Shown here in pieces: positions 47,801-64,000 of a stretch of 64,000 nucleotides of DNA. The first letter of the stretch is position 1; each line of letters starts with the position of its first letter. The notes below the pieces were generated by a model. The model worked only from the letters and a program-made list of their open reading frames with translations. It had not been told where the DNA came from and ran no database searches. The DNA lies in IMG/VR virus record IMGVR_UViG_3300044638_006750, positions 62,001-126,000 of that record. The stretch is one strand, 5' to 3'. Position numbers and translations under genes: made by a program.

Positions 47801-48166
47801 GCAAGTCCCACTAATACTAGGACGCCGACTCCTACTATTAGTGAAACGCCGACATTAACTCCTACAATAAGTCAAACCCCAACAACAACCACTACTACAA
47901 CTCCAACAGGAACCCCACAACCTACTCCAACAAGAACTCCTACTAGAACGGTTTCTGCTACTCCTACTAATACTAGAACGCCTACCCCGACACCTACACA
48001 TACTCAGACTCAAACTCCGAGTAACAGTCCTACTCCAAGAAATTCTTGGGATATTGACGGACAGCAAATTGTCTTTACGGATGCAGAAAGAAATTCTGTG
48101 GATCTTAGTTGCAAGTGTATAGCAGAAGAGACCCTTGCCAGAGAGGGTAGGTCTGATGGTGTATAA
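44897..48166 (+). CDS. Beta-propeller/RCC1-repeat structural protein with a C-terminal PT linker (1089 aa)
   Basis: N-terminal propeller blades (VYAGEVLAGGDF, YNGKLYIFGNF) and RCC1-like VAVLTTSGEIYIWGKNSYGQLG. PT tract at about 47698-48040. Confidence 0.78.
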   Translation: MALVDAVADNSLVYIISNSRQNLHVLNTRNQIDDINLDGLAETVTISGKPYAAKRIYSVIVYAGEVLAGGDFGLKRWNVGSRKWERYATFTGGISSLVDKGLFPNSVLSMKTYNGKLYIFGNFVDSLIGSTPSAVTSRYIVVYNGSFFEPVNGANTLPIINLSAYGLLSKSSVNPALNDNIFSLYIYNNNIYILDKGIFNGKSTLQDVVKADALTDVANDGTTLVYCLLDGATTFSTRKINGQILNDYQIDSTLYITSAVKKSGSQYQQNLFSSIDLNTSDITRGYEVFLGTTYASVTGDIFTNYNVEGNSTTSAISNKATRFLKQNNVKFRKIHNGISIQNGTYEQTKAAILIDTNNNLWALKSQWVETNSSAAYYVPLSQEISYQAFVQYNLDYGPLTLNGRIVDAVMGLDTVAVLTTSGEIYIWGKNSYGQLGPDIPLGSIIDSPVKVAGNGYKKLYVCDNTYYAIKDDNTLYAWGQSTTDLGGQLIPGVVGNALLPTQIEIAIGTNDTPINRTGSSVVSDQMGSFWKSISLSPVGIYGIDITGLLYYWGGPEGTSAYPITRTVSGNSEKHTGLFDIENIKPIPAPSAPGNPVLLGCPAFVNDETPIIGDPGQYIDISHDSCWYNHNYVFNFSIQSNTTGVPSTVFSLTQKSINADLIHVSSFVTYTYVLNDKTYTTYWHKNLLNDETGDNSVGKINTSAWVKTANVSSYIISLPIPQAKTLATGNIYELNLNTNNHKQLLIKFRFNNKPYWTINSLSGISTLGSVNTLSGLGLTNIRLCAIDAASALRIDTGSPVRYDYLTRNKKWDSTNEYYAIDDDGELYGLPYSGYPGVSNKYPFVLPYKYYITKDNSFTGSTSLFDINNSYISDILIDNNRLIIAGSIPNGNSFYSYKSLAIYDLEQSSVVNLTIDTTSAINTVINKILPQSDWVQPPPPPTPTPTPTQTPTTSLTPSNTPTISLSPTNTASPTNTRTPTPTISETPTLTPTISQTPTTTTTTTPTGTPQPTPTRTPTRTVSATPTNTRTPTPTPTHTQTQTPSNSPTPRNSWDIDGQQIVFTDAERNSVDLSCKCIAEETLAREGRSDGV
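47698..48040 (+). repeat. Pro/Thr-rich linker in 44897..48166
   Basis: Direct translation. Confidence 0.9.
48158..48166 (+). promoter_or_regulatory. Candidate late-promoter motif GGTGTATAA
   Basis: Variant of GTGTAT(T)AA overlapping the stop codon, 31 nt upstream of ATG 48197. Confidence 0.25.
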
Positions 48167-49102: not shown

Positions 49103-50938
49103 ATGGCAGGAACAATACTAAATCCAGGCGGATCTAACAGACAAGCCTGTATAGATGTAAAATTTGCTCATAGTGGACTTAATGCTGACCTAGGATTAGG
49201 TGCTGCTCCTTTAGTTACTCTCAATAGAGAATTTCTTCAAGATGGTGCTGGTACCTTTATTGGTGTTAACAATAAAATCAATTTATCTGGACAAATACGT
49301 CCCAGCGGTACCCAATTAGGATTTTCTCTTTTAATGCAGAGAGAAAAGAGATTAAGGGATTTATTTTCTAATGGGGCTGGGGATTTTGAAATCACTACAT
49401 CTGGAACCCCAATTTTTAGTGGTGTTAATGCCAAAGTAATATCCTATAATACGGAAAAAAGCGACAATAATTGGGTTATGAGTATGGGCTACTCTATAGA
49501 TCTAGAGTTTTACGAACCGATACAAAACCCAAATGAAACCGGTAAAAAATATAGAGTAAGCAGTATAACTGAAGGATGGTCTATAGAACCAATAGAAGAT
49601 AATATTTATACAAAGATAGACACCCCTGCCTCAGATCCTGATCCAGATTCTGTTGGTGGCCAAACACAAATAGAGAATATTCCTCAATTTAGACTGACTC
49701 GTAGAGTATCAGCTGTTGGCGTTCCAGATTCTGGTTTTTTTTCTCATTTTGACCCAAAAAGAAATGCCGACTCAGAATATAATTTTCGTACAATAACCCA
49801 ATCTCCTTCAAAAGATGCCTACCAGAAGGCAAAAGAATGGGTAGACGATAGGCTGAATTTACCGTTTAATACAACACAAAATTCTAATGGTAGATATACG
49901 GCACTAGTAAGCTCTTCGGACTCGTCATTTGGATCTATGTTCAATAGTTTTAGCAGCTTATACTTATATAATCATACTAGAAACATCAATTATAGTATTA
50001 CTGAGGGCTCGTATGAAGTGAATGATAGTTGGCTAGCCTTACCAAAAGCTTCAAGGTTTACAGAAACTTTTACTATAGAAACATCTACAGATAATAAAAA
50101 TGTTAGAAATGTTAGAATACAAGGAACCATAAATGGGTTACAGATTACTAATGGAAATTTATATGCAACAGGAATGAAAATACCTTATAGTGGAGATGGC
50201 AAAATATATTTAAGTGGATATAATGTAACTGGGGAAACATATGAAAATATTGTTGGTGAAAAATACAATAATGCTGTCTCAGGATGGATATATGATGTTA
50301 AACCAGCTTTATACAAAAGAGCTTGTTTAGCTATTAATAGCCGAGATAGAACTCAGCCATGGTATGATCCTAATAATAGTAATGGCTTATTACCTCCTGG
50401 TAATCCTGTATTTAGAAAAGAAAATGTATTAAATTATATTCCAATTTCTACATCAGAAAATTATGATATTTTTAATGGTACAGTTTCTTATAACTATGAA
50501 TATAATAATATAATTAAAATTATAAGTGGCGTTATATCAGAATCATATAAGATAGAAACTACCGGGCCATCTGACAGCATAGCAGAATTATTTATTCTTA
50601 ATAGGCCATTAGGCCCAGCTTTCCAATATCTGGGAACAAAAACTAGCACTTCTCGTAAGGTGGAAATAGATTTGGTTTTGGTTCCTCCATCAAGCATAGA
50701 TGGGTTTTCGATGGATGACACGAATTGTCCAGTTCATTATAATAGTTATGTATTCCAAAAATGCCAAGAATTTATTGAGTCTCAAAAACCATATGAAGAA
50801 TCTGGTAACGGTATGATAGTAATTAAAAAAAGTGATACATATGGATGGAGTCCAACAGACGGCAGATTTAGCAGAAGTGTGGAGTGGCTTTATCAGCCCT
50901 GTGCTAAAGATAGCAACCCTTATCAATTTTTAAGGTAA
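49103..50938 (+). CDS. Putative distal-tail/baseplate structural protein, paralog 1 (611 aa)
   Basis: Beta-strand-rich alternating pattern; precedes the hub-like gene; clearly homologous to 50942..52900. Function is inferred from position. Confidence 0.55.
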   Translation: MAGTILNPGGSNRQACIDVKFAHSGLNADLGLGAAPLVTLNREFLQDGAGTFIGVNNKINLSGQIRPSGTQLGFSLLMQREKRLRDLFSNGAGDFEITTSGTPIFSGVNAKVISYNTEKSDNNWVMSMGYSIDLEFYEPIQNPNETGKKYRVSSITEGWSIEPIEDNIYTKIDTPASDPDPDSVGGQTQIENIPQFRLTRRVSAVGVPDSGFFSHFDPKRNADSEYNFRTITQSPSKDAYQKAKEWVDDRLNLPFNTTQNSNGRYTALVSSSDSSFGSMFNSFSSLYLYNHTRNINYSITEGSYEVNDSWLALPKASRFTETFTIETSTDNKNVRNVRIQGTINGLQITNGNLYATGMKIPYSGDGKIYLSGYNVTGETYENIVGEKYNNAVSGWIYDVKPALYKRACLAINSRDRTQPWYDPNNSNGLLPPGNPVFRKENVLNYIPISTSENYDIFNGTVSYNYEYNNIIKIISGVISESYKIETTGPSDSIAELFILNRPLGPAFQYLGTKTSTSRKVEIDLVLVPPSSIDGFSMDDTNCPVHYNSYVFQKCQEFIESQKPYEESGNGMIVIKKSDTYGWSPTDGRFSRSVEWLYQPCAKDSNPYQFLR

Positions 50939-50941
50939 GAC

Positions 50942-52900
50942 ATGGTAGTACCACTAATTCTTAATAATAATCAATCCAATAATAATTTTAATATTTTAAC
51001 TACGGCAAAACCAGGAGACGGTACTGGCTCTTTGAGGGATGAGCAGATAGACATCTATTTCTGTGGTAGTGGTTTTGGCAGTCACCTTAAATTAGGCCCA
51101 GTGCCATTAATTTCAATATCCAGAGATTTTATTAGAGATGGTGCCGGATCATATATAGGAATTAATAATAAAATTAATTTATCTGGTAAAATATATGATA
51201 GTGGTAATCCGGGTATTAGTGGTATTTTAGTAGGTAAAGAAGATAATCTAAAAAGCCTTATAAAAAGAGGTGTCGGAGATCTGGAAATTAAAAAAAGTGG
51301 TGGTAGTAACTTATTGGGAGAAAAAGGAGGAAAAAATGCTAAGGTTGTAGGCTATACCATAGATAAGACCCCAGATCATTGGGTTTATACTGCCGACTAT
51401 TCTATAGATTTCTCATATTACGAATCTATAGCCAAGTCTGACTATCGTGTTAGTAGTGTAAACGAATCGTGGTCTTTAGAGCCAGTCGGAGAGCTTGTTT
51501 ATTTGGCTTTAAGTAAATCTGTAGGAAAACGCACAGAAACAGAACCAGCATCTGCTACAACAATGACTAATGTGATGGTGACAGGATTGCCACAGTTTAG
51601 ACTAACAAGAAAATTATCAGCAGTAGGTGTAAGAACTGATACATTTGTTTCTCATGATCGCACATCTCGTCATGAATACAATCTAACAGCTGCATCAGAC
51701 GAAAAAGCAGAAAACGATGCTTATTTACAAGCAAAAAAATGGATAGACGATAGGCTTAATCTTCCTTTTGAGACATCACAAAATAATAAAGGAGATTATA
51801 CTACTAAAATTGCTGATGCATACAATATTAGTAGTTTCACTAATTTATTTGTTTGTAATCATAGTAGATCTATTAATTTTAGTATAACTGAAGGTTCTTA
51901 TGAGGTTAATGATACATGGTTAGCTTTGCCTAGTGGTATCAGACATACTGAAGAATTCACTATAGAAAGTTCTACAGATGAAAAGTTTATTAAAACAGTT
52001 AAGGTTCAGGGATTAATTAAGGGACTACATGTTGCTAATAGTAATATAGTAACAAAAAATGCAGACCTGCCCGATGCTAATGGTAAACTAAAACTAGGTC
52101 AATACAGTACTAGTGGAACATCTGGCACTGTTGGGGGCAAAACCTTTAAAGGAGAAAAATACCAAAATGCACTAGATGCATGGATAGATGATATAAAACC
52201 ATCTCTATATACTCGTGCATGTTTAGCTTTAAATACGCCTGACAGAACACAAGATTACTATCCTAGTAACTATAATGGTGGTACAACACCTCCGGGAAAT
52301 CCGGCATTCCGAAAAGAAAATCTGTTGAACATTATTCCTGTGTCTTCATCTGAATCTCATGACACCTTAAAAGGTGCTGTTGGTTACACTTATGAATATA
52401 ACAATGCTACAAAAATTTTTAGTGGTGTTATTTCTGAAAGTGTTAGTATTAATACAAATGGCCCTGGAGATATTGCGGTAGAATTATTTGTACTAGGCAG
52501 ACCACTTGGTCCTGTATTACAATCATTAGGTACTAAAACAGCTACTACTAAAAGCGTTAATATAGAATTAATTATACCTCCTCCAACAACAGCTGCTGCT
52601 TTTAATATGAGAAATAATACATGTCCTGTATGGACTGGAGGATATATTTTTCAAACATGTGAAGCTATAATAGAAGGACAAAAACCCTTCGGTAAAAGAT
52701 TTTCCAAGAATGAAACTTTGCCAAATTCTCCTAGTAAAGGAGTTTATACATCTAGCAAAGGCGGTTTTCAAGGGGATGTTTATGTCAAATCTGATACTTA
52801 TTCATGGAACCCTTCAGAAGGAAGATATACAAGAAATATTGAATGGATATTTGAGCCCGGAAGCGCAGATCAATATAGCTGCCTAAAACAAGAAGGATAA
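50942..52900 (+). CDS. Putative distal-tail/baseplate structural protein, paralog 2 (652 aa)
   Basis: Shares blocks with paralog 1, e.g. PQFRLTR, W.DDRLNLPF, IN.SITEGSYEVND.WLALP, PPGNP.FRKEN, RPLGP. Confidence 0.55.
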   Translation: MVVPLILNNNQSNNNFNILTTAKPGDGTGSLRDEQIDIYFCGSGFGSHLKLGPVPLISISRDFIRDGAGSYIGINNKINLSGKIYDSGNPGISGILVGKEDNLKSLIKRGVGDLEIKKSGGSNLLGEKGGKNAKVVGYTIDKTPDHWVYTADYSIDFSYYESIAKSDYRVSSVNESWSLEPVGELVYLALSKSVGKRTETEPASATTMTNVMVTGLPQFRLTRKLSAVGVRTDTFVSHDRTSRHEYNLTAASDEKAENDAYLQAKKWIDDRLNLPFETSQNNKGDYTTKIADAYNISSFTNLFVCNHSRSINFSITEGSYEVNDTWLALPSGIRHTEEFTIESSTDEKFIKTVKVQGLIKGLHVANSNIVTKNADLPDANGKLKLGQYSTSGTSGTVGGKTFKGEKYQNALDAWIDDIKPSLYTRACLALNTPDRTQDYYPSNYNGGTTPPGNPAFRKENLLNIIPVSSSESHDTLKGAVGYTYEYNNATKIFSGVISESVSINTNGPGDIAVELFVLGRPLGPVLQSLGTKTATTKSVNIELIIPPPTTAAAFNMRNNTCPVWTGGYIFQTCEAIIEGQKPFGKRFSKNETLPNSPSKGVYTSSKGGFQGDVYVKSDTYSWNPSEGRYTRNIEWIFEPGSADQYSCLKQEG

Positions 52901-52903
52901 AAG

Positions 52904-55900
52904 ATGTCACTAGCATATACTGGAAACAGTTCATCAAATAGAACACAGCCGAAAAATCAAAGAAAAACTGTACCTCAAATTATGTTTTTGGGGGCTAGTG
53001 TAGCAAATTTTACTACAAATTTAGGATGGGGCGCACAGGCATCTTCGTTGAATGTGAATTTAGTGACAGATAATTCTGGCTGTACAGTTACAGATGATGT
53101 GATTAAAATAGAAGGACAGGCAGGTGGAGGATTTGATAATGATAATCATTATTATGATACTCCTGATGGAGATAATTTATATGTCTCTAGAGATCCAAGT
53201 ACTGGAAGAGGGATCTTATACGGGAAAATACATCATAAATGGAGTACAAGTAAAGGAAAATTTGTTTCAGTATATCACAGGAAAAAAGATCCTGGATTCT
53301 TTGGACTAAAAAATAATTGGGTTACAACAAATAATGCCGGTTATGATATCACTGGAACACCAGTTTATTTTAGATGCGGAGACTTTGAATATTCAGGACT
53401 GATAAAGAACTGGGAGACTAGCGCAGGAAGCGGAGGGGAGACAACAACTGTAACTATAGAAAGTCCAGCTTCTTTATTAGCAAATTCTTATATTATTGTC
53501 GGAGAATATGCCGGATCCGTTTTTGCAAGATCGACTAGTGCAGCCACAATAGGCGCTCCTAGAAATTATTATGGAGATAAGGCAAACTATGATGGAAAAA
53601 TAGAGTATGGAGCAATCCATAATTTGTTTAATGTATATGGTTTTCTGGAATCCTTTGAATTTGGTTTTTCTGACCAAAATGAACAAGGTATTCCAATATC
53701 ATATATTATTAATGCTATGCAGATTTTAACAAGCGAAAAAAATAAAGCTATTTCAAAAGCTTTTACTCCTTTCCAAAGAATTATAGGTCGTGCAGCAATG
53801 CAGTCGGACCAATCCTTTTGTCCTACTGGTTTTTATGACGGACACGGATTGTTCCCCTATGTGTCGGATGGTGCTGGTGGGTATAGGCACGAATATATAC
53901 TAGACTTATCAGAATTACCTAGACCAAATAATTTACTCAGAATGAATGGTCCAGTTATCAGCATATTGGATCTAGTGACCCAGGTTTGCGACATGACATC
54001 GAGAGATTTCTTTATTGAATTGATACCTATGCCATCTGAAAATGGCAACCTTTGTATACCTGTAATAAAAGTAAGAACAGTTAATAGATATACACAGCCC
54101 GCTCCTAATCAAGTTAAAAATATTATCAATAGTATTATGAATACATATGCTATTAGTAATATTAGCTATGGTCAGGAGTCAGGAGAAGCTTTAAATAGAA
54201 CAATGCTTATTGGGGGACCACAACAAAGACTATATCAGGCAAAGAATTTTAGACTAGCATATACTCAGTGCAATTATATTTTAGATCCTTCTGCTGTTAA
54301 GGCGGTAAATTTTTATTCCTATAATATGTCTAAGTATAGGGTTCCAAGTGGTTTGTCTACAAGATTAGCGACAAACGCTAATTTAGTTGCTAGCGATTAT
54401 TCTTGGTTAATTGCAGATGATGAGATTATTAAAAATAAAGTAGAGGACTGCTATACTTATACTACATCTACTGTTTTTCAGGATACAGACAATGGACCAG
54501 GATTATCCAGTATAGTGGTGGGGGCGGGAGGTAAGAAATTAGGAAACTATCAAAAAGATTCTTCCTATAACCCTATTCCTCTTTATACTTTTGCTCCAAG
54601 TATTGCGGGGTCACCTGTTGATAATATTAGAGCAAGATGGATGCCATTAGATAACGATGTTATATCTCCGTTTTTTGGTTTTGAGTTTGAAGAAAAATCT
54701 GCCACAACAGACGGCCTACCAGAAGAAAGCTTGAAAAGACCAAGAAAGGTTTATCTTGATACATTTACAGGTCAGCAAGTCATAGTATTTGATATAGCAG
54801 AATTACCTCCTCTCAGATACGGTATCAACACAATATATCCTAATAGTAAGTTTGTGGTAACAGAAACAGAGATTAGAGCTGCTATGGCAGGATTTGATAA
54901 TCTTGTTCTATATTATGCTTCAAAAACATACAAGCCAGACCTTATCCTTATGTTACAAAAAACATATGTAACTAACAGAATGTCTATTGTTTCAACACCA
55001 GATGGTCCGATGGCAATGGGTCCATGGGGTATGGTTGAAGATCAAAATGCGGCAGATACAGAGGGTGGGCCTTCTCCAGATGTTTTTGCGGATCAGGATG
55101 AGGAGGTGAATGTTACAAATCTTTTATTAAGTAAATCATTTACGGAAGATTTAATGGCTATTCATGCTTTTATTGCTGATATTGGGGCCAAGTATTATGG
55201 TAAAGCCTATTCTGTCAAATTACCAGGAGTCAATGGATATAGAGATTGGACAAGTGGGGGTAACCAAGAAATAGGAACAGACTCAAATGGCAACCCCGTA
55301 TATGTATGGGCTGGAGTACCAAAGACATACTACAATTATGAGGTTGCTCAAGATGGTGCTTGGGAAGAACCAGGAAATTATATTGATGATGATATTATTG
55401 TTGGATCAACAGACTCATATCACCTAATGGATGAAACAGGCAGAATTCAAACCACTTTGGGATATAATGCTTCTGATAACTTCGACCACACTGCACAAAA
55501 AATGTGTAGCAGTGCTGCTTTACTCGATGCTGCTTATCGTAGTCGCAAATTAAATCCTGTATTCGGAGTAGAGTTATATTCTATGCAGGCTATAGAGTTT
55601 CAAGATTGTGATAATGCTAAGTTTTATTATCCTTCGATTGATCTTAGTGGAGTAGCCGAGGATGTTTTAGTGGTTAATAATAGGAATGAAATAAAAAATC
55701 CATATGGCGTTGGAGCAAATATACCAACACAACATGGACGGAAAGCCTATGTAAAAGCCACGACAAGACCTAATTTTTATTTTAGTAACGCTAATACACT
55801 ATCCGACCCTAGAGTAATAGTTGATTCACCCGGACTCTTTTTAAATAGTAGTAGTTTAGAATATACTCAAGATCCAAACAAAACAGTAGTATCTAATGCT

Positions 55901-58675
55901 GCTTTAGAGGATTTATTAATATATATTTATACAACACCATCTAATTTCAGAGTATTAGATATTATGAGAGTATGGTCTTCTAGACTAAGCCATATGTATA
56001 ATGGCTATTTACTAAGATCAAAACACAAAAAATCTGAATCAGCACAAATGGTTGAGTTAGCGCCAAAAGCTGCCCAGCCATTTTTTGCTGCGATCCCTCT
56101 TAAGCATAATAGATTTGTTTATGGGCCATGGACTGACTATCCTCATATCTATAAAGCAAATATATTTCCCGGATCCTCTAATCAAGATAATATGATAAAA
56201 AATCTTCTTAGTGGTATTAGGGTTGAGGTTGATCCAGAGATGGTTCCGTGGAATTACGGAGGTTCGTCTCTCATGGATAAAGCTGCAATGTTAAAGCTCT
56301 ATGAGGGACAAACGTATCAAAATGTTATAGAGTCTGGATCATTCGAAATTCCCGGTCTACCAGTATTTGGTTTGGGCGGCAGGCTAGCGTCTCCATATGC
56401 TACTAAAAATTATAGTAACCAATATTTTCTAAGAAAAACAGATAGTTTTACCTATAAAAATAGTACCTATAATTTTAACTATTTACAAGATCAAAACTTT
56501 AATGATGTTAATCCTGTCATTAGCAATATACAAGTTACTGTGTCCGAAAGTAAAATCTCTACATCTTACTCTTTGAAAGTTTACTCAAAGCCTTTAAGCA
56601 GATTTAATAAAGAAGCTGCTGATAGACTTAAGAAAATAGCTAAACAAAACTTAATGATTACTCAAAGAAGCTCTACAGCTGTCAAGAAAATAGTTGCAGA
56701 GAATATTAGAACATTACAGGGTCAGATAGGTCGTAGAGAATCTGGTTTTACTGGTTATTCCACAGAGGGCGCTTCCAAAAAGCTATTAGGCTGGAGTCCT
56801 GTTCGTTTACTAATTGGTAGTGCAGAATACCATGTTTCGCCTCCAACCAAAATTGCTGCTAGAACTACTAGAACAAATATTAATAATGATCAGCAGTCTC
56901 GTGCCACAGGCACTGGAACCAGTAGTCAAAATAATACCAATGTTACAGCCAAGGTATACGAAGGCAGTAGAGGAGATTGGGATATTAATGGATCTTTTAA
57001 TAGTAGTAATTCTAATGTTCCGTATGATCAGGCGAGTGGCCCTATCAACACGATGATTAAAGACGTTAGACATTACGCTACTGTCAGTATACATCAACCA
57101 AAAGAACGAGGTTTGGACGAACTGAATAATTATGGTAACAAAGCCGTAATGAGTTTGGACGGCATATTGTCTCCAATATCTTTTTATCCAACCACATATA
57201 ATTCTTGTTATAGTTTGGCTAAATGGCCAAGATCAAAATGTCCTGTTTGTTGTGGTTCAAAAATTTTAAATGAAAAATTTAGAGACTATAAAAGTAATTC
57301 AGAAATTGATATTAAAAAATTCTGTCCATATTGCTATGATGAGACTACTACACAAGCACAGAAAACTCTTCCCAAAAAGAGCAATAGCAATTTGCCTCTA
57401 CCACCATATATTACTGTAAAAAATACAGGCGATACAAATATTTTAGGTATAAGCGCTGATCAGTATGGATTGAATAAGGTTAGTGGAGCTACTATTAATG
57501 TTTTTAGTTTACAGCCAGTTCTTCAAAGCAATGGTGATTTTAAAAACCCAAATGCTCAACCTTCTGATAAGAAGCGTCATTCGATAAGTGTCGTTGGAAG
57601 AGGAGGGGTGCATCATGGAGAAACAATAGGAGGTATGACCGACCTCATTATTAAAAATAATTTAGAGAATAATAGATATGGTGCTAATCCAGACTTTAAT
57701 GGAGAAGTGGATCTTAAATTACAGCAATATTTATCGGCTTGTAGTAATACACAGGCCGTTAACATAGCTGGCAATTGTGGTTTTCAATCATACCCACTAA
57801 ATAATAGATTTATGGGTTTAAGAGGACCACTAATGTTACACGCTTGGGGATATGACTTAGACGGCTATCCTGTACCCAACGCCGCAGAGGAGCCTAAAGA
57901 AGTTAATGATAAAGGCATGTTTAAAAGACACAAGAAAAAACAGGCTACACATGCAGATGGTAGTCTGGTAGTAGATGCTGATAATAATCCTGTCTACGAA
58001 GATGATTATGATCATGCAGGAGATTTTCCAGGAGGATCATTATCGGCTGATCAGCTTGGTAGTATTATTGGGAAAAGTCAAGTTTGGTCAGCAACGGATA
58101 ATAAGTGGAGTAAACCTGTAAGAAGCGATAAGTTCTATCTTAATTGGGGAGAAAGGCCAGATTTATGGCCAGTTGGACCGATAGATTTAAGATGGGACAA
58201 AGAGAGAAAAGTATGGGTGGCCCCACAACCAAAAGTTTATAAGAATGTATATATAACACTAGAAGAAGATTTGGTTACAGTACAAAATCCAGAAGATACA
58301 CTAAAACCTTGTAGGGGATTCATAACAGACTTAGAATATGATACAACAAGCGAAGATGTGAGAAAACTAGTTTTTGTAGTCGATAAATCAGGATATACAG
58401 CGCCTAAAGGAGCTAAATTATTATGTATGTATAATCCGGATAGCGGATTTTATGAAATATTAAGCAAGCCTACCTTTACTGCTTTTGGAACAATAGAATC
58501 AAACGGATCAAATGCTACACTAACATTAACATATATGCAAAGTAGGAACAGGAGTATAGATACAAACACCGTCTCTGTGCCATTCAGCAATCCATTTAGT
58601 TTCGGGGTCTCTGCCGAACAAAAGGGTTTATTTATGTATATTGATGGTGCATGGAATTTGATATCTACTAATTAA
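52904..58675 (+). CDS. Putative baseplate hub / tail tip protein (1923 aa)
   Basis: N-terminal FLGASVANFTTNLGWGAQASSLNVNLV and FEYSGLIKNWE...TTVTIESP are hub-like beta segments. Contains a CxxC-x24-CxxC motif. Size and position fit a Tal/gpJ-like role (inference). Confidence 0.55.
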   Translation: MSLAYTGNSSSNRTQPKNQRKTVPQIMFLGASVANFTTNLGWGAQASSLNVNLVTDNSGCTVTDDVIKIEGQAGGGFDNDNHYYDTPDGDNLYVSRDPSTGRGILYGKIHHKWSTSKGKFVSVYHRKKDPGFFGLKNNWVTTNNAGYDITGTPVYFRCGDFEYSGLIKNWETSAGSGGETTTVTIESPASLLANSYIIVGEYAGSVFARSTSAATIGAPRNYYGDKANYDGKIEYGAIHNLFNVYGFLESFEFGFSDQNEQGIPISYIINAMQILTSEKNKAISKAFTPFQRIIGRAAMQSDQSFCPTGFYDGHGLFPYVSDGAGGYRHEYILDLSELPRPNNLLRMNGPVISILDLVTQVCDMTSRDFFIELIPMPSENGNLCIPVIKVRTVNRYTQPAPNQVKNIINSIMNTYAISNISYGQESGEALNRTMLIGGPQQRLYQAKNFRLAYTQCNYILDPSAVKAVNFYSYNMSKYRVPSGLSTRLATNANLVASDYSWLIADDEIIKNKVEDCYTYTTSTVFQDTDNGPGLSSIVVGAGGKKLGNYQKDSSYNPIPLYTFAPSIAGSPVDNIRARWMPLDNDVISPFFGFEFEEKSATTDGLPEESLKRPRKVYLDTFTGQQVIVFDIAELPPLRYGINTIYPNSKFVVTETEIRAAMAGFDNLVLYYASKTYKPDLILMLQKTYVTNRMSIVSTPDGPMAMGPWGMVEDQNAADTEGGPSPDVFADQDEEVNVTNLLLSKSFTEDLMAIHAFIADIGAKYYGKAYSVKLPGVNGYRDWTSGGNQEIGTDSNGNPVYVWAGVPKTYYNYEVAQDGAWEEPGNYIDDDIIVGSTDSYHLMDETGRIQTTLGYNASDNFDHTAQKMCSSAALLDAAYRSRKLNPVFGVELYSMQAIEFQDCDNAKFYYPSIDLSGVAEDVLVVNNRNEIKNPYGVGANIPTQHGRKAYVKATTRPNFYFSNANTLSDPRVIVDSPGLFLNSSSLEYTQDPNKTVVSNAALEDLLIYIYTTPSNFRVLDIMRVWSSRLSHMYNGYLLRSKHKKSESAQMVELAPKAAQPFFAAIPLKHNRFVYGPWTDYPHIYKANIFPGSSNQDNMIKNLLSGIRVEVDPEMVPWNYGGSSLMDKAAMLKLYEGQTYQNVIESGSFEIPGLPVFGLGGRLASPYATKNYSNQYFLRKTDSFTYKNSTYNFNYLQDQNFNDVNPVISNIQVTVSESKISTSYSLKVYSKPLSRFNKEAADRLKKIAKQNLMITQRSSTAVKKIVAENIRTLQGQIGRRESGFTGYSTEGASKKLLGWSPVRLLIGSAEYHVSPPTKIAARTTRTNINNDQQSRATGTGTSSQNNTNVTAKVYEGSRGDWDINGSFNSSNSNVPYDQASGPINTMIKDVRHYATVSIHQPKERGLDELNNYGNKAVMSLDGILSPISFYPTTYNSCYSLAKWPRSKCPVCCGSKILNEKFRDYKSNSEIDIKKFCPYCYDETTTQAQKTLPKKSNSNLPLPPYITVKNTGDTNILGISADQYGLNKVSGATINVFSLQPVLQSNGDFKNPNAQPSDKKRHSISVVGRGGVHHGETIGGMTDLIIKNNLENNRYGANPDFNGEVDLKLQQYLSACSNTQAVNIAGNCGFQSYPLNNRFMGLRGPLMLHAWGYDLDGYPVPNAAEEPKEVNDKGMFKRHKKKQATHADGSLVVDADNNPVYEDDYDHAGDFPGGSLSADQLGSIIGKSQVWSATDNKWSKPVRSDKFYLNWGERPDLWPVGPIDLRWDKERKVWVAPQPKVYKNVYITLEEDLVTVQNPEDTLKPCRGFITDLEYDTTSEDVRKLVFVVDKSGYTAPKGAKLLCMYNPDSGFYEILSKPTFTAFGTIESNGSNATLTLTYMQSRNRSIDTNTVSVPFSNPFSFGVSAEQKGLFMYIDGAWNLISTN

Positions 58676-58677
58676 AA

Positions 58678-61600
58678 ATGTTACATAAAGATACTAAAAA
58701 ATGCAGTTTATTCAAAACACAAATATATGATAATCTATATCCCTTCTACTTATTTTCTAGCGGTGGAACAGCTATAAGCTCCAGATTCGGAAGTTCTGTA
58801 CAGCCATTAACCGTAAATAAGTTATCTAGTCTCACAGCATATTTAAGAGCAGACACAGAAGAAGAAGTTTGGACTCCAGCATTTATCTATGCTGGCACTC
58901 TTGCAACAATGCCGTATCTTGAGGGACAGGTCAACAGAAAACCAGTCTTGGGTTTTGATCAATTTTTTGTTATAGGCAATCCCGCATTTAAAGATATAAC
59001 ACTAGAAAACAATATTAAGGTTGGAGTTGACTGGTTTTTAAATGATCCTCTCAATACCGATATTACTCCGGACAAAGGGATTTTTTTCTGGTATAAAAAA
59101 CGTAGCAGCGATCCCAGAACCACACAATTATCTAATGTGGCTATTGGAGAATGGATATATTCGGGATCAGCTTTTAATGCTAAAACAGATACTCAAAAAA
59201 ATATTACTATTCCAGCCGGACAAATACTAGTAAAACTAAATAATAAAGAATTACAGGTTTTACCATCTAATATCACCACGCTTTCCAATGCAAGTCTAAT
59301 TAGAGATATTAAACTATACAATAATCCATTGGGCTCCGGCACTAATATATATGAGCCTACAAAAATTAATTTAGATAGTTCGTCAAATAAACCATCTACA
59401 TGGAATATATATAATAATTTTCATTACTTAAATGCTAACAATGCATATTTTAGTATTCATATTCCAGATGGAGACTACTTCTCATACTATGGTTTAGATA
59501 GTTCATTAAACTATTATTTATCTTTTAATTTAATGCCAACATATAGAACTATCTATAATAATATTTTAAATATTACTAGATTAACAAGTCTTACATCGTC
59601 TCAAGCTAAACAACTACAAAAGCTATGTTATGTACTAGCTACTGGTCCTCAGAACGACAAAGTAACACTAAACATAGACGGATATAATTCTTCTGGAAAC
59701 TATATTCCTAGTATAATTGCTTTTATCAACGACCCTTCGGCATCAGATAGTTCTTTAGTAGCCATTTGTCAAAATGCATATAGAGAAATAAAACACTTAG
59801 AAAAAAATAGAGTTTATAATACATCTATAGTACCATATAAAATTAACCCATCTGATATAAGTACTAATTATTCTAAAGTTCCTAATGATATTTTTAATAA
59901 ATTAGCATCTAAATATGGTTTATATTTAAGAATATCTGGAGATAATGCTAAAATTACCGTAAACAGACTATTAAGATGGAAAACCAGTAAAAATGGTACA
60001 GACTATAGCGGTGGACCAAATATATCTATAGATTCTCGATATGTCTATTGGACCACCTCCAGAGATATTTCTGGTGAAGCTACTAGCAGACCAACTCCTG
60101 GAAACGTTGGTCATCGTTATTATGATCAGCACATACAGGCCGGTTCTATGAGAATAGAAACAGATATGGCTAACCAACTAGTATATTTCAAAGCTGTAGA
60201 TGCTGGTAGCGAAAATGCGACTATTAAAGCTGGCATTATTAAGGCATCTCAAAATCCCAGAATAAATACTAGTGAGAGTAATTTTTTATTGTTGCCAGAA
60301 ATTAAGTACTGTATGTTTTATAAACAGGGAGGTTTTAAAATAATTAGCAGTACATGCTATATAGATGAGCCGGTTGGTCAATCAAGCATTTATAATGGGA
60401 AATTGGATGGTAAACCAATATTTTTAAAAACTGATAAATTAGCATCTAGATGGGGTTCTTCTGGTACAAAAGAATTTAACTTTGATAATGCAGACACAGA
60501 TCTATATAAAAAACCATCTTTAAAATTTAAAGTATATGATTCATCTGATATTATTAAACTAGAAAGTTTGGACATAAATTTTTTAAGATATAAAGAAGAA
60601 ACATTGTGTGGGTGTGAATCCTTTTATAAAGAAGTTATCAGCAGAAGTGAAAATTATACTAAAGAAATAGGTGTTAATAGATTTTTAGGTATAGACGTAT
60701 TTGAGCAAACTCCGAAGAAGGTTGGATACGGGAGGGCTGGATATTGCGATACAATATATCTTGGCAAAGTAAAGAATACAGTAGCTGGAGTAGAAATAGA
60801 GGAGATGTCTAGCACTTCGGTGCCGGGTGTTTCTACTAAATATTCTCCTCCTATTCTAGCCTACGGTGGATATGATGCGTCTATTGTTTCCGAACTTGGT
60901 ATTAAATTGCCTAGTCATCCTATGCCGGGAGATAAATTACCTATATTAGATACTAGAAATCCGAATTATACAGATGAGACCAAGTGTTATCAAAGAACAG
61001 GATATATAGAGGATGGATCATACTTTTCTCACAGCGCCGATAATACATCATCTGATAATATTATAGGTTCAATAGATTTTGAAAGAGGATTTTTCCATCC
61101 TCATTATGGTTGGATTGGGGTGGGGCATCCAATGTATGCAGACTATAAGAATAAAACAGCGGTAGTATCATATAGACCGGATTTTAAATCTAAGTTTACT
61201 TTTAAGGGGGTAGGTTTTATATTTGCTCCAGAATACAGCTCTTATCATAGTACTGTTAATATAAAATTAGGAGCACAAAAAACAAATTCTGAAGAGGTTA
61301 ATATTCAAACAGGGGCCAGAGATATTACGACATATCAGTCAAAATATCCTCATGAGTATCTCACTGAAGAATGCATTCCGTATAGAGGTAAAAGAGATGC
61401 AAATGGCAACTTTGTAGATACTACAGAAAGGCTTAGAGACAACGATTGTAGTAATAACTATCAGCCCAAAATAGATTACTATATATATCCCTTGAAAGAT
61501 GCTGCTACATCAGAAGTGATTGTAAATCAAACAGATATAGAAAATTTAAGAATAAAAGACATAGAAATTAAATTAAACTTTGTTAATTTTGATAATATTC

Positions 61601-64000
61601 AAGATATTAAGCTTACCTTAGAGTATACCAATACCGCCTATAATAACGTAACGACACCAAGTGCCTATTATGCGTCTGTTGGAACGCAACCGTTTCCAGG
61701 AGAATCCGGAATCAACAACTATGTAACAGCACTAGCCAACCAGAATACTTCTAATACTATAATTTTATTAAATAAAGAACATATCAAACAATATGGTGCT
61801 GAATTTGTACTAAGATTTTCTGACTACGCCAGCCCATATACTTTTCCTAATCCTCTAAATAAATATGATCAGGAACTTAACCACAGCTCACTGCTTAATA
61901 GTAGTTTAGCGGATGGTGAGGTTATTCACCCGTCATTTAAGCCAGACGGATACACAGATAAAGATGTTCAGTATTATAAAGAAATTATGAATTCTTATAA
62001 TATGTCAATTATAAACAATAAATTTAGAAAATGGTATGGTCAGTCAGTAATTAATAGTACATTTAAACTGAAAGTAGAATTAGTAAATTCATACCCTAAA
62101 GGAAATTATGGAAATATCCCAGACCTTCATCTTAAAAATAATAGAGATTTTGATCTATTAAAATCAAATATTGCCAGAAATTCTATTTGTAATTGGGAAA
62201 TTATATTAGATACATATAAGACAACAGATGCAACACATAGAAAAGAACAGAGAATAAACATTAATCATACGGCAGCGAATCATATTGACTACACTCGTAC
62301 AGATACATCTTTATCCAATACTTCTGGCAGCTATCCAGATGGTTATAATTTTATTGGTGATTTTACTGATCGTAAATTTCTAGTACCTCCAGTAAACATA
62401 AATGCTCCGCACCAATATTTAACAGATTACAATTCATGTGTTTATCCTACTCAAGAATATAATAATTTCGGGTTTGCCAGAGTAGAGGACAATGCATTAA
62501 GATTTATTTATCAAGCATTTAATCTTTTTTCTGCTGGTATTGGTATGGCAGCTGGTATGGGTGCGATTGGTGGTTTAACAGGTGCGTTTGTCGGAGGAAC
62601 TATATTTGGGGCGGCGTCTAGTCTTGCCGTAAATAGCATAGTATCATATTACAATAATGCTAGAAGAACTAGACTAGTAGATGCTTTTGATGATAGTTTC
62701 TATGACCCATCGTATGATAATTATGGTTATGGAGTACCAGATAAAGCGCTGATAGAAATTTCAGTAGACGGTGGATATAAATGGTATATATTTGATGCTA
62801 AAATTTTCAAATATAACCAGTACTGTTCTCCAGTATATAAGCCTCTTAAAATACAGTACAATGGAGCCGGCCCAGTATCAGAAACTACTTGTTCTAAACT
62901 AAGTACGTCTTTGGTCCCAACCACGCCATCGGCAACTTCTCCAATTATTGTCGATCCTAATACTTATAACAATATTACTGGATTGATCCTACCCGCAAAG
63001 AGCATTAAAGCCAAAGAGTTGTATATACATAAAAATATTAGATTATTAAATAATAAACCCAACATAACTAACATTTCTAATGTATTTATAGGTTTTAATA
63101 CATATGATCCGGAAAGCACAGTATGTATCGAGATTCCTCATGTTAAAGCATTTTATTATTTAAAAACTGGTACCATAACAACGAATGCTCAAATAGATAT
63201 CATATATCATGATCAGAATGGTTATGGATATAGAAACTTAATCCAAAAAACAATTAATAATATTGCTATTCTCAATAAAAATAATCAATATAATACATAT
63301 ATTTTATTTAACGATAAAACTCTTAAAAATACTTTAGACAAAAATTTAGATTCTAATATATTAATTCAAAAAAGCAATGCTGAAGATTTATTAGGGGTAG
63401 TTTTGTATAAGGGAGGTAATTTATTTACGGCGGCTAGTGTCAAAGCTTTAATAAACAATAATGTCTTCACGCCGGACTATACTATGCCGGTATATGGAGA
63501 AGGTGCTTGGGGCAGGGGTTCTTCCTCTAACAATCTTTATCCAGCTAAAAAACTTACAATACCTAAAGACTATAGCTTAATTGATTTTGCTAGAGGTTAT
63601 AGTCCAAATAGATATGTTGGACGAATTCAGGTAGGAAATAATTCTCCAATACTAACATCTTCTTTAGAAATAGGTTTGTTCGATAATATCAATGGGTGGC
63701 CGCTATACAAGAATCCAGAAAAATTTAACTTATATTCAATTAGTAGCGACAATAAACAATATCTATATAAAAATATTAGTGATTTAAATTCTATTTTTTA
63801 TTTTTATACAATGACAAGTATAGAAGGTTTAAAAAATAAAGATATGCCGACAGCTGGATCAATTACTTTATTAGACCATTTGATTCCTGCGAAATTGGGT
63901 AGTAGTAGTGGAGGTTTGTCTGGAGCTAAAATAGAAGCTATATATAGCAGTCTAGATGTTGAGGGCGCTAACGGTTGTTTTGGTGGCCACTATTGTAACA
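58678..64000 (+). CDS. Very large tail-tip/fibre-like protein, 3' partial (at least 1774 aa), absent from the supplied ORF track
   Basis: ATG lies 2 nt after the previous TAA. I read frame 1 codon by codon and found no stop before the window end (MLHKDTKKCSLFKTQIYDNLYPF...GCFGGHYCN). Contains a P-domain-like region, a glycine-zipper hairpin and an Asp-box. Confidence 0.9.
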   Translation, partial: MLHKDTKKCSLFKTQIYDNLYPFYLFSSGGTAISSRFGSSVQPLTVNKLSSLTAYLRADTEEEVWTPAFIYAGTLATMPYLEGQVNRKPVLGFDQFFVIGNPAFKDITLENNIKVGVDWFLNDPLNTDITPDKGIFFWYKKRSSDPRTTQLSNVAIGEWIYSGSAFNAKTDTQKNITIPAGQILVKLNNKELQVLPSNITTLSNASLIRDIKLYNNPLGSGTNIYEPTKINLDSSSNKPSTWNIYNNFHYLNANNAYFSIHIPDGDYFSYYGLDSSLNYYLSFNLMPTYRTIYNNILNITRLTSLTSSQAKQLQKLCYVLATGPQNDKVTLNIDGYNSSGNYIPSIIAFINDPSASDSSLVAICQNAYREIKHLEKNRVYNTSIVPYKINPSDISTNYSKVPNDIFNKLASKYGLYLRISGDNAKITVNRLLRWKTSKNGTDYSGGPNISIDSRYVYWTTSRDISGEATSRPTPGNVGHRYYDQHIQAGSMRIETDMANQLVYFKAVDAGSENATIKAGIIKASQNPRINTSESNFLLLPEIKYCMFYKQGGFKIISSTCYIDEPVGQSSIYNGKLDGKPIFLKTDKLASRWGSSGTKEFNFDNADTDLYKKPSLKFKVYDSSDIIKLESLDINFLRYKEETLCGCESFYKEVISRSENYTKEIGVNRFLGIDVFEQTPKKVGYGRAGYCDTIYLGKVKNTVAGVEIEEMSSTSVPGVSTKYSPPILAYGGYDASIVSELGIKLPSHPMPGDKLPILDTRNPNYTDETKCYQRTGYIEDGSYFSHSADNTSSDNIIGSIDFERGFFHPHYGWIGVGHPMYADYKNKTAVVSYRPDFKSKFTFKGVGFIFAPEYSSYHSTVNIKLGAQKTNSEEVNIQTGARDITTYQSKYPHEYLTEECIPYRGKRDANGNFVDTTERLRDNDCSNNYQPKIDYYIYPLKDAATSEVIVNQTDIENLRIKDIEIKLNFVNFDNIQDIKLTLEYTNTAYNNVTTPSAYYASVGTQPFPGESGINNYVTALANQNTSNTIILLNKEHIKQYGAEFVLRFSDYASPYTFPNPLNKYDQELNHSSLLNSSLADGEVIHPSFKPDGYTDKDVQYYKEIMNSYNMSIINNKFRKWYGQSVINSTFKLKVELVNSYPKGNYGNIPDLHLKNNRDFDLLKSNIARNSICNWEIILDTYKTTDATHRKEQRININHTAANHIDYTRTDTSLSNTSGSYPDGYNFIGDFTDRKFLVPPVNINAPHQYLTDYNSCVYPTQEYNNFGFARVEDNALRFIYQAFNLFSAGIGMAAGMGAIGGLTGAFVGGTIFGAASSLAVNSIVSYYNNARRTRLVDAFDDSFYDPSYDNYGYGVPDKALIEISVDGGYKWYIFDAKIFKYNQYCSPVYKPLKIQYNGAGPVSETTCSKLSTSLVPTTPSATSPIIVDPNTYNNITGLILPAKSIKAKELYIHKNIRLLNNKPNITNISNVFIGFNTYDPESTVCIEIPHVKAFYYLKTGTITTNAQIDIIYHDQNGYGYRNLIQKTINNIAILNKNNQYNTYILFNDKTLKNTLDKNLDSNILIQKSNAEDLLGVVLYKGGNLFTAASVKALINNNVFTPDYTMPVYGEGAWGRGSSSNNLYPAKKLTIPKDYSLIDFARGYSPNRYVGRIQVGNNSPILTSSLEIGLFDNINGWPLYKNPEKFNLYSISSDNKQYLYKNISDLNSIFYFYTMTSIEGLKNKDMPTAGSITLLDHLIPAKLGSSSGGLSGAKIEAIYSSLDVEGANGCFGGHYCN

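What the first reader, a model, noticed from the sequence alone, without database searches (positions are those of the whole stretch)
58678..64000. Untracked ORF of at least 1774 aa with a P-domain-like region, glycine-zipper hairpin and Asp-box
Seen: an uninterrupted frame to the window end. IKDIEIKLNFVNF...IKLTL (61552-61620), IILLNKEHI...LRFSDYA, FRKWYG...FKLKVE and NSICNWEIIL (~62180-62210) follow the pattern of a proprotein-convertase P-domain jelly roll spread out by inserts. FSAGIGMAAGMGAIGGLTGAFVGGTIFGAASSLAVNSIV (62527-62643) is a hydrophobic glycine-zipper hairpin. EISVDGGYKW (~62755-62784) is an Asp-box. Inference: a central tail-tip protein with a membrane-inserting hairpin that could pair with the TMP glycine zipper during DNA entry.
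Basis: partly seen in the sequence, partly recalled or inferred. Interest (0 to 1): 0.6.

Follow-up and report, generated by a model that had tools for sequence, protein, structure and literature searches.

The report
Giant phage tail protein, hydrophobic core segment
The open frame is a real 2,266-residue gene at the end of the tail-gene block of a 233-kb freshwater-lake phage. It founds a large unnamed protein family that combines two sugar-binding-type beta-sandwich domains (one related to the furin P-domain) with a conserved greasy, glycine-rich segment that may contact the host membrane.

Summary
The frame starting at 58678 runs 1,479 nt past the window, giving a 2,266-aa protein. All quoted motifs sit at the stated coordinates.

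The protein has no Pfam, PHROG, PDB-sequence or GenBank-phage match. It nevertheless belongs to a big family: 329 clusters at 50% identity, nearly all 2,100-2,750 aa. The family occurs only in uncultivated phages and always lies last in a conserved trio of tail genes.

The P-domain guess is supported three ways for residues about 835-1184:
- furin P-domain alignment: Z 7.5, 123 aa, rmsd 3.1 Å;
- ESM-Atlas phage clusters that carry PF01483;
- hhalign probability 92% against a true PF01483 domain in the same phage, with a null maximum score of 18.7 against 47.4.

The N-terminus is a ConA-like lectin jelly roll.

The glycine-rich hydrophobic stretch is the greasiest window of the whole protein in 102 of 123 family members. 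It is modelled as one long low-confidence helix, not a hairpin.

The Asp-box is a single conserved beta-hairpin whose canonical spacing is not kept across the family.

"Central tail-tip protein" is not supported: 19 genes separate it from the tape measure gene, and no hub fold was found. Membrane insertion remains an inference.

The parts
58678..64000 (+). First 1774 codons of a 2266-codon gene. The full gene is G000:C1:120678-127478 = L002:678-7478 (protein P0002). It starts 2 nt after the stop of the upstream 1923-aa ORF.
58690..60627 (+). N-terminal ConA-like (legume-lectin/LamG-type) jelly roll with inserts, residues about 5-650, of which about 170-185 residues align.
   Evidence: VIA-align Z 9.6-8.8 to NTNH 8c8g_B, ERGIC-53 8jp4_A, phage J-1 Dit CBM2 5ly8_A and TM4 gp23 receptor-binding domain 9n6a_A; Z 8.2 to Douge baseplate 8zdo_a. 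Model pLDDT is mostly 70-90.
61180..62229 (+). P-domain-like beta-sandwich with large inserts, residues about 835-1184.
   Evidence: Furin 4omc_A residues 448-574: Z 7.5, rmsd 3.1 A, 123 aligned. Atlas cluster of phage proteins, 95% with PF01483: 157 aligned, rmsd 3.3 A. hhalign A5 against P0167:160-310: probability 91.8%, score 47.4, against a null maximum of 18.7 in 110 controls. PF01483 itself does not hit.
62386..62409 (+). Nearly invariant P-P-V-N-x-N-A-P motif (residues 1237-1244) just upstream of the hydrophobic segment.
   Evidence: P, N, N, A and P are invariant or at least 90% conserved in 60 family sequences and in 26 full-length sequences.
62503..62643 (+). Uncharged Gly/Ala-rich hydrophobic segment (residues 1276-1322) with G1298-x3-G1302-x3-G1306, followed by a basic patch (R1328, R1329, R1331).
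   Evidence: It holds the top 15 hydropathy windows of the protein. The global hydropathy maximum falls here in 102 of 123 family members, median 1.65. The uncharged stretch has a median of 37 aa, against 26 for the longest run elsewhere. Zipper motifs occur in 73 of 106 segments, against 52 expected. It is modelled as part of one helix, 1273-1341, at pLDDT 55-64.
62743..62811 (+). Asp-box-like beta-hairpin: strand 1356-1362, turn, strand 1370-1378. S1362 and W1369 are conserved.
   Evidence: Secondary structure E177-183 and E191-199 of the C-half model at pLDDT 76-86. Conservation. Regex statistics.
62983..63378 (+). Small beta-barrel domain, residues about 1436-1567, with no informative match.
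   Evidence: VIA-align Z 7.0-7.5 to unrelated small barrels (6tek_B, ribosomal L3-type). This is a common arrangement only.
52904..58675 (+). Upstream 1923-aa ORF, a syntenic partner in every full relative's locus (29-77% identity).
   Evidence: tblastn to loci. Alignment A8. No Pfam, PHROG or PDB match.
49103..52900 (+). Two tandem paralogous ORFs (611 and 652 aa, 44% identical). Distant relatives carry one copy of about 650 aa just upstream of the two giant genes.
10444..10563 (+). For comparison: Gly-rich hydrophobic stretch of the 4284-aa tape measure protein (residues 2809-2848). It is the only other such stretch among 42 structural-block ORFs.
   Evidence: The tape measure assignment rests on PF10145 at residues 188-393. 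There is no sequence similarity to the target's segment beyond composition.

Best explanation
The gene encodes a conserved, giant, beta-rich structural protein of the distal tail or baseplate of a long-tailed freshwater jumbo phage. It is the last member of a conserved gene trio: about 650 aa, about 2000 aa, about 2300 aa.

Shown:
- It carries two beta-sandwich modules of the kinds phages use to hold cell-surface glycans. One is an N-terminal ConA-like jelly roll. The other is a diverged P-domain-like sandwich with large inserts.
- After these comes an invariant P-P-V-N-x-N-A-P motif, then a 30-45-residue uncharged Gly/Ala-rich hydrophobic segment, then an Asp-box-like hairpin.
- The C-terminal half is about 900 residues of beta-rich sequence with no recognisable fold.

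Inferred:
- The lectin-like modules bind the host envelope.
- The hydrophobic segment is kept out of water in the virion, inside an oligomer or against a partner. On triggering it is exposed and enters a host membrane. It then anchors the tail or helps the tape measure protein's own glycine-rich segment to open the DNA channel.
- This would resemble the way T5 uses pb3 legs together with the 46-residue hydrophobic stretch of pb2.

The protein is not the hub or tip directly below the tape measure.
For: Real, conserved gene.

Tail-module position:
- Terminase and portal lie upstream.
- A 4284-aa tape measure protein with PF10145 is present.
- Proteins with RCC1 repeats, and one also with a LamG-type lectin domain, lie between the tape measure gene and the target.
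- The same gene order holds in distant relatives, followed by a strand switch.

Lectin-type folds: ConA-like Z 8.2-9.6, including phage baseplate carbohydrate modules. P-domain-like.

Hydrophobic segment:
- Its position and character are conserved while its sequence drifts.
- It is the single greasiest part of a protein that is otherwise polar.

Divergence is uniform along the length, with no swapped tip, which fits a core machine part rather than a host-range cassette.

Precedents:
- T5 pb2 hydrophobic stretch and pb3 membrane legs (PMC10038345).
- Glycine zippers in tape measure proteins and in a membrane-translocating T6SS effector (PMC10240207).
Against: - There is no virion proteomics or image. 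Structural status rests on gene position and fold type.
- No TM predictor was available. Kyte-Doolittle reaches 1.51 in this protein, just under the usual 1.6, although the family median is 1.65.
- In close relatives the second half of the stretch carries Asp and Arg, and a few members have a very short stretch.
- The model gives a single low-confidence helix whose packing cannot be judged.
- The trimer test gave no answer.
- Fold matches are of middling strength (Z 7.5-9.6) on 1200-residue models.
- Much of the glycine-zipper periodicity is explained by composition (73 observed against 52 expected).
Confidence: 0.4

Rival explanations
1. Purely architectural protein. The Gly/Ala-rich helix is a tightly packed oligomerisation or partner-binding core, for example against the 1923-aa neighbour. 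It never meets a membrane, and the protein is a baseplate strut or fibre with glycan-binding modules.
For: - Small-residue helices pack tightly in soluble bundles as well.
- The segment is modelled as part of a 69-residue straight helix.
- Close relatives have Asp/Arg in its second half.
- The most conserved stretches (762-831 and 2075-2196) are modelled with pLDDT under 50, as expected for parts that fold only in an assembly.
- Synteny with two partner genes is strict.
Against: - The sequence of the segment drifts freely while only hydrophobicity, lack of charge and small residues are kept. That is more typical of lipid-facing than of protein-core segments.
- The only comparable stretch in the structural block is in the tape measure protein.
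Confidence: 0.33
2. A central tail-tip protein (hub, central fibre, Tal/gpJ-like) whose hairpin pairs with the tape measure zipper during DNA entry.
For: - Both proteins carry Gly-rich hydrophobic stretches.
- The T5 precedent shows cooperation between tip protein and tape measure protein.
Against: - 19 ORFs separate it from the tape measure gene.
- No hub-type fold appears among the listed matches of the N-half.
- There is no similarity between the two segments beyond composition.
- The size and lectin-type modules look like peripheral baseplate parts.
Confidence: 0.1
3. Not a virion part. A membrane-anchored protein made in the infected cell, for example an assembly platform for the very large baseplate or a surface-modifying or exclusion factor, with the hydrophobic stretch as its anchor.
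For: - There is a hydrophobic stretch followed by a basic patch.
- It is the last large gene of the operon.
- A conserved Cys-rich 144-aa gene lies downstream.
Against: - There is no N-terminal signal or anchor.
- It is tightly coupled to tail genes with a 2-nt spacer.
- It is 2266 aa of beta-sandwich modules typical of virion proteins.
- The trio is conserved inside tail modules.
Confidence: 0.1
4. An internal protein ejected through the tail, like T7 gp16 or N4 vRNAP-type cargo, that forms the trans-envelope conduit.
For: Giant size and a hydrophobic segment.
Against: - It is beta-rich and multi-domain rather than helical or extended.
- The phage already has a 4284-aa tape measure protein for that role.
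- No polymerase or lysin motif was found.
Confidence: 0.05

Closest known systems
Proprotein-convertase P domain (Pfam PF01483; furin residues 448-574, PDB 4omc)
   Same: The beta-sandwich of residues about 835-1184 superposes on 123 of about 127 P-domain residues at 3.1 A. The first two strand pairs align at profile level with a true PF01483 domain of the same phage. Atlas neighbours are PF01483 proteins, including phage ones.
   Different: There is no PF01483 hit at E<=1. The domain is stretched to about 350 residues by inserts with helices. No subtilisin domain is attached. Only the N-terminal half aligns at sequence-profile level.
ConA-like lectin/glucanase modules of siphophage baseplates (phage J-1 evolved Dit CBM2, 5ly8; TM4 gp23 receptor-binding domain, 9n6a; Douge baseplate, 8zdo)
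   Same: The jelly-roll fold matches at Z 8.2-9.1 over 171-185 residues. It sits in a tail-module protein.
   Different: Sequence identity is 5-8%. The module is at the N-terminus of a 2266-aa chain and is interrupted by inserts. Sugar binding is untested.
Hydrophobic stretch of tape measure proteins (T5 pb2: 46 hydrophobic residues read as two TM helices; glycine zippers in Burkholderia prophage tape measure proteins)
   Same: It is an uncharged Gly/Ala-rich stretch of 30-47 residues in a tail-gene product, with GxxxG spacing. The same phage's tape measure protein has one too.
   Different: The host protein is not a tape measure. It has no PF10145, is beta-rich, and lies 44 kb downstream. The segment is internal, at 57% of the chain. 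It has no sequence similarity to the tape measure protein's segment.
Asp-box (BNR) motif S-x-D-x-G-x-T-W of sialidase-type propellers
   Same: This protein matches S-x-D-x-G-x-K-W on a predicted beta-hairpin.
   Different: It is a single copy and not in a propeller. There is no BNR Pfam hit. Most family members are one residue shorter.
Class I viral fusion peptides (Gly/Ala-rich, followed by a long helix). This comparison comes from my own knowledge and was not tested.
   Same: Composition, length, and position at the start of a long predicted helix.
   Different: It is internal with no known cleavage site, no trimeric coiled coil was shown (one search gave no answer), and the target membrane is bacterial.

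Membership tests
P_proprotein (PF01483) P domain | Scores above the Pfam gathering threshold (21 bits). | tested here: not met
   There is no hit at E<=1 in P0002 or in 13 relatives. The genome-wide six-frame scan at E<=10 finds only the 461-aa ORF P0167 (33.4 bits).
P_proprotein (PF01483) P domain | Eight-stranded jelly-roll beta-sandwich superposable on a convertase P domain. | tested here: met
   4omc_A residues 448-574 against model 838-1181: Z 7.5, rmsd 3.1 A, 123 aligned. An Atlas PF01483 cluster aligns over 157 residues at rmsd 3.3 A. The Z-score is middling and the domain was not folded alone.
P_proprotein (PF01483) P domain | Profile-level sequence homology to a bona fide member. | tested here: met
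   hhalign of the 60-sequence profile A5 against P0167:160-310: probability 91.8%, E 7.3e-7, 82 columns. 110 control segments reach at most score 18.7. Only the first half of the domain aligns.
P_proprotein (PF01483) P domain | Follows a subtilisin/kexin catalytic domain. | tested here: not met
   No Peptidase_S8 hit. Stand-alone P domains are common outside convertases, so this bears on 'convertase' and not on the fold.
ConA-like lectin/glucanase superfamily | Curved two-sheet jelly roll. | tested here: met
   Z 9.6-8.0 to many lectins, GH16 enzymes and phage carbohydrate modules, with 160-185 residues aligned. There is no Pfam hit.
ConA-like lectin/glucanase superfamily | Carbohydrate binding, or GH16 catalytic E-x-D-x-x-E. 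| not tested
   No coordinates or ligand modelling were available.
Asp-box / BNR repeat | S-x-D-x-G-x-T-W on a beta-hairpin. | tested here: met
   Residues 1362-1369 match with K in place of T. The model has strand-turn-strand there.
Asp-box / BNR repeat | Motif kept across homologues; usually repeated in a propeller. | tested here: not met
   S and W are at least 90% conserved, but the spacing is one residue shorter in most members. It is a single copy. No BNR family hit.
Transmembrane glycine zipper | (G/A/S)xxxGxxx(G/A/S) inside a hydrophobic stretch of TM length. | tested here: met
   There are six overlapping matches in residues 1284-1322. The motif is present in 73 of 106 family segments, against 52 expected from composition. 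Hydropathy is covered.
Transmembrane glycine zipper | Actually spans or enters a membrane and self-associates there. | not testable with these tools
   No TM predictor or experiment was available. The oligomer prediction gave no answer.
Tail hub / Tal / gpJ-type central tip protein | Gene directly downstream of the tape measure and Dit genes. | tested here: not met
   19 ORFs lie between the tape measure gene (2020-14874) and the target (58678-).
Tail hub / Tal / gpJ-type central tip protein | gp27-like hub domains at the N-terminus. | tested here: inconclusive
   None appears among the 50 listed matches of the N-half model or in Foldseek. One dominant domain can fill such lists.
Tape measure protein | PF10145 or another tape measure family hit; long helical chain. 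| tested here: not met
   There is no such hit, and the models are beta-rich. The phage's tape measure protein is the 4284-aa ORF.

The most novel reading that the evidence does not exclude
A whole clade of long-tailed aquatic jumbo phages carries, besides the tape measure protein, a second membrane-active virion component. This would be an external 2,300-residue baseplate protein that first binds envelope glycans through lectin-type modules. It would then deploy an internal fusion-peptide-like Gly/Ala segment into the host membrane, a kind of entry device not described for tailed phages.
Probability: 0.25. Interest if true: 0.7.

Novelty: new variant of a known kind. Interest (0 to 1): 0.45.

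Why it matters
How siphophage-type tails breach the envelope is known in structural detail for very few phages, T5 and lambda among them. There the membrane-active parts are the tape measure protein and short legs of the hub.

This family is large (329 clusters at 50% identity), strictly phage-borne and wholly unannotated. It offers a candidate additional player with a clear, mutable element: the Gly/Ala segment and the invariant motif before it.

It also gives a name and a domain map to one of the biggest 'dark' genes of a phage group that recurs in lake metagenomes. It shows as well that P-domain-type sandwiches are reused in phage virion proteins in a form too diverged for Pfam to detect.

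Tried and rejected
Searches that found nothing:
- Pfam and PHROGs on the protein and its relatives.
- PDB sequence profiles A1, A3 and A4: nothing meaningful, best E 0.05.
- tblastn against 50,697 GenBank phage records.
- 185,579 prokaryote species genomes: no relative, hence no prophage or host clue.
- Foldseek against PDB and BFVD with both half-models: nothing at E<=1e-3 except one implausible capsid row.
- ESM-Atlas feature search on residues 930-1420 and 1860-2266: no usable hit.
- VIA-align on the C-half: only single-long-helix look-alikes and a generic small barrel.
- Profiles of the two syntenic neighbours against PDB and Pfam.
- Rfam and promoter/terminator scans of the gene and its surroundings: nothing above chance.
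- No tRNA in the window.

Tests without a verdict:
- Homotrimer prediction of residues 1230-1400 returned 'no answer'. It counts neither for nor against.
- Similarity between the tape measure protein's and the target's hydrophobic segments: not significant.

Ideas considered and dropped:
- A crAss-type virion RNA polymerase, because of the size and a D-G-D string near residue 265. That string lies on strands of the lectin sandwich, is D-G-E in most relatives, and there is no DxDxD motif.

Technical failures:
- Two control scripts timed out before the sampled control ran.

Not used:
- No alternative genetic code was needed.
Full report
**1. Observation**

The window is bases 62001-126000 of a 232,683-bp virus record rated complete by CheckV.
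- The frame opening at 58678 is uninterrupted to the window end. In the parent record it runs on to genome position 127478, giving a 2266-residue protein, P0002.
- Its ATG lies 2 nt after the stop of the preceding 1923-aa ORF. No sigma-70-like or terminator signal above chance is nearby.

**2. A real gene and a large family**

No named family or cultured phage matches it.
- Pfam, PHROGs and a PDB sequence profile give nothing.
- tblastn finds nothing in 50,697 GenBank phage records.

Relatives are nevertheless plentiful.
- A word search finds 13 full-length relatives at 23-68% identity.
- IMG/VR holds 27 loci, most with full-length relatives at 22-28% identity and 2250-2700 aa. All start with a similar N-terminus that has a conserved Cys at position 9.
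- A profile of the C-terminal half retrieves 329 cluster representatives at 50% identity, 150 of them at E<=1e-30. Nearly all are 2100-2750 aa with the same layout.
- None is found in 185,579 prokaryote species genomes.
- Near-identical DNA occurs in lake and freshwater metagenomes of at least seven studies.

Divergence among close relatives is even along the chain, 0.51-0.81 per 60-residue window. There is no swapped or hypervariable tip.

**3. Context**

- Upstream lie the large terminase and the portal.
- A 4284-aa tape measure protein carries PF10145 at residues 188-393.
- About 20 further + strand ORFs follow. Four of them are large proteins with RCC1 repeats, and one of these also has a LamG-type lectin domain.
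- The target is the 20th ORF after the tape measure gene.
- Its immediate neighbourhood is conserved across the clade. The order is a roughly 650-aa gene (duplicated here into 611- and 652-aa paralogues, 44% identical), a roughly 2000-aa gene (1923 aa here), then the target.
- In many loci a 144-aa Cys-rich gene follows, and then the strand switches.
- Neither neighbour has any Pfam or PDB match.
- By terminase, the nearest cultured phages are long-tailed Bacillus siphophages at about 24% identity.

**4. Anatomy from structure prediction**

Two AlphaFold2 models were built on 25-sequence alignments.
- Residues 1-1200: mean pLDDT 69.6, pTM 0.68.
- Residues 1180-2266: mean pLDDT 61.2.
- Foldseek finds nothing significant in the PDB or BFVD.

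Exhaustive alignment of the N-half against 48,161 PDB representatives gives two domain-level results.

(a) Residues about 5-650 contain a ConA-like jelly roll.
- Z is 9.6-8.8 with 170-185 residues aligned.
- Matches include ERGIC-53 and legume lectins, GH16 enzymes, the CBM2 of the phage J-1 'evolved' Dit and the TM4 gp23 receptor-binding domain.
- A mycobacteriophage Douge baseplate chain matches at Z 8.2.

(b) Outside that first domain, the one distinct match listed is human furin.
- Precisely its P domain (residues 448-574) aligns to model residues 838-1181, with Z 7.5, rmsd 3.1 Å and 123 residues aligned.

**5. Independent tests of the P-domain idea**

- A shape search of the ESM Atlas returns PCSK6 in row 1. 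Row 2 is a cluster of phage proteins, 95% of which carry PF01483, aligned to residues 835-1184 over 157 residues at rmsd 3.3 Å.
- PF01483 itself does not hit the target. It does hit another gene of the same phage above threshold: a 461-aa ORF between the portal and tail genes, residues 182-302, at 33-34 bits.
- A 60-sequence profile of the target's region (A5) aligns to that domain with hhalign probability 91.8%, E 7.3e-7 and score 47.4.
- 110 random 151-residue pieces of this phage's own ORFs score at most 18.7, with a median of 11.6.

I conclude that residues about 835-1184 are a diverged P-domain-type sandwich expanded by inserts. It fails the formal Pfam test and has no protease attached.

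**6. The hydrophobic segment**

In this protein:
- All 15 highest Kyte-Doolittle windows fall at residues 1280-1305, with a maximum of 1.51.
- Among the 42 ORFs of the structural block, the only other long Gly-rich hydrophobic stretch is in the tape measure protein, residues 2809-2848.

Across 123 full-length family representatives:
- The global hydropathy maximum lies in the aligned region in 102, with a median of 1.65. It reaches at least 1.6 in 73.
- The uncharged run has a median of 37 residues (interquartile range 30-43). The longest uncharged run anywhere else has a median of 26.
- About 45% of the residues in the run are Gly, Ala, Ser or Thr.

The sequence drifts and the length varies, while three things are kept: the flanking motifs, one central Gly (G1302) and the hydrophobic character. 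Glycine-zipper spacing is present in 73 of 106 segments, against 52 expected from composition alone, so it is only partly a periodicity signal.

AlphaFold2 draws residues 1273-1341 as one helix at pLDDT 55-64 between linkers under 50. Structural neighbours of that part are simply long single helices. Hairpin geometry is therefore not supported, and burial cannot be judged. A three-copy prediction of residues 1230-1400 returned 'no answer'. The tape measure protein's segment and the target's share composition only.

**7. The Asp-box**

- The pattern occurs once, against 0.0066 expected in shuffles.
- It sits on a confidently modelled strand-turn-strand.
- S1362 and W1369 are conserved in at least 90% of members. 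Most members have the motif one residue shorter.
- It is best described as an Asp-box-like hairpin and says nothing about function.

**8. Other points on the protein**

- The two most conserved stretches, residues 762-831 and above all 2075-2196, are modelled with very low confidence. The second includes a run of invariant residues at 2141-2175. This is what one expects of parts that fold only in an assembly.
- The rest of the C-terminal half is beta-rich with a terminal helical bundle and has no informative match.

**9. Interpretation**

The best-supported reading is a core structural protein of the distal tail or baseplate that carries glycan-binding-type modules. A conserved hydrophobic element is its most distinctive feature.

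Published precedent makes membrane insertion a reasonable mechanism.
- In T5, the tape measure protein pb2 has a 46-residue hydrophobic stretch, read as two TM helices that form the outer-membrane channel. The hub pb3 refolds into membrane-anchoring legs (PMC10038345).
- Glycine zippers overlap TM segments in tape measure proteins and drive membrane translocation of the T6SS effector Tde1 (PMC10240207).

Membrane insertion here remains inference. The main rival, a buried packing helix, is nearly as likely.

**10. Limits**

- Only two structure jobs were available, so the domains were not folded singly.
- Model coordinates could not be inspected.
- No TM predictor was at hand.
- No cultured relative exists.
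- Comparisons with viral fusion peptides and with the usual Dit/Tal gene order rest on my own knowledge.

Noticed in passing
window 2020-14874: The tape measure protein is 4284 aa (PF10145 at residues 188-393). By the usual rule of about 1.5 A per residue (my own knowledge), this implies a tail of roughly 0.6 micrometres. It has a Gly-rich hydrophobic stretch at residues 2809-2848 (window 10444-10563).
   Followed up: partly
window 27883-33174, 33186-39845, 42165-44885, 44897-48166: Four large tail-module proteins (1763, 2219, 906 and 1089 aa) carry RCC1-repeat beta-propeller signatures. The 2219-aa one also has a Laminin_G_3 lectin domain. They are probably the real host-recognition fibres.
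   Followed up: no
L003:11525-12907 (genome 55525-56910, upstream of the window): A 461-aa protein between the portal and tail genes has a bona fide P_proprotein domain (PF01483, residues 182-302), followed by a Pro/Thr-rich linker and a Cys-containing C-terminal domain. It may be a head or neck decoration.
   Followed up: partly
L003:13116-14027 (genome 57116-58030): An RgpF-like (rhamnan synthesis protein F) glycosyltransferase domain, E 1.8e-19, sits inside the structural gene block. Together with the Pro/Thr-rich virion proteins this hints at glycosylated virions.
   Followed up: no
L002:7484-9571 (directly downstream of the target, beyond the window): A 695-aa ORF is made largely of Pro/Thr repeats with short structured islands. 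It is present only in the closest relatives. The PHROG 15511 hits in several proteins of this phage probably reflect such low-complexity linkers.
   Followed up: partly
L002:9582-10016: A 144-aa Cys-rich protein with several CxxC pairs, zinc-ribbon-like, gives a weak DUF6171 hit and a phrog_13558 hit. It is conserved shortly downstream of the target in 14 loci.
   Followed up: partly
window 49103-50938 and 50942-52900: A tandem duplication: the 611- and 652-aa ORFs are 44% identical, and both match a single roughly 650-aa ORF in distant relatives.
   Followed up: yes
window 52904-58675: The upstream 1923-aa protein is better conserved than the target (29-41% identity in distant loci), with very many invariant residues including CxxC pairs near residues 1446-1477. 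It has no match in Pfam, PHROGs or the PDB. It is an equally 'dark' giant gene.
   Followed up: partly
P0002 residues 762-831 and 2075-2196 (the latter beyond the window; L002 about 6900-7265): The most conserved stretches of the target are the worst-modelled ones (pLDDT 25-50), suggesting interface regions.
   Followed up: no
whole record: Near-identical copies of the gene occur in lake and freshwater metagenomes from at least seven separate studies between 2016 and 2025. No RNA run holds it.
   Followed up: partly
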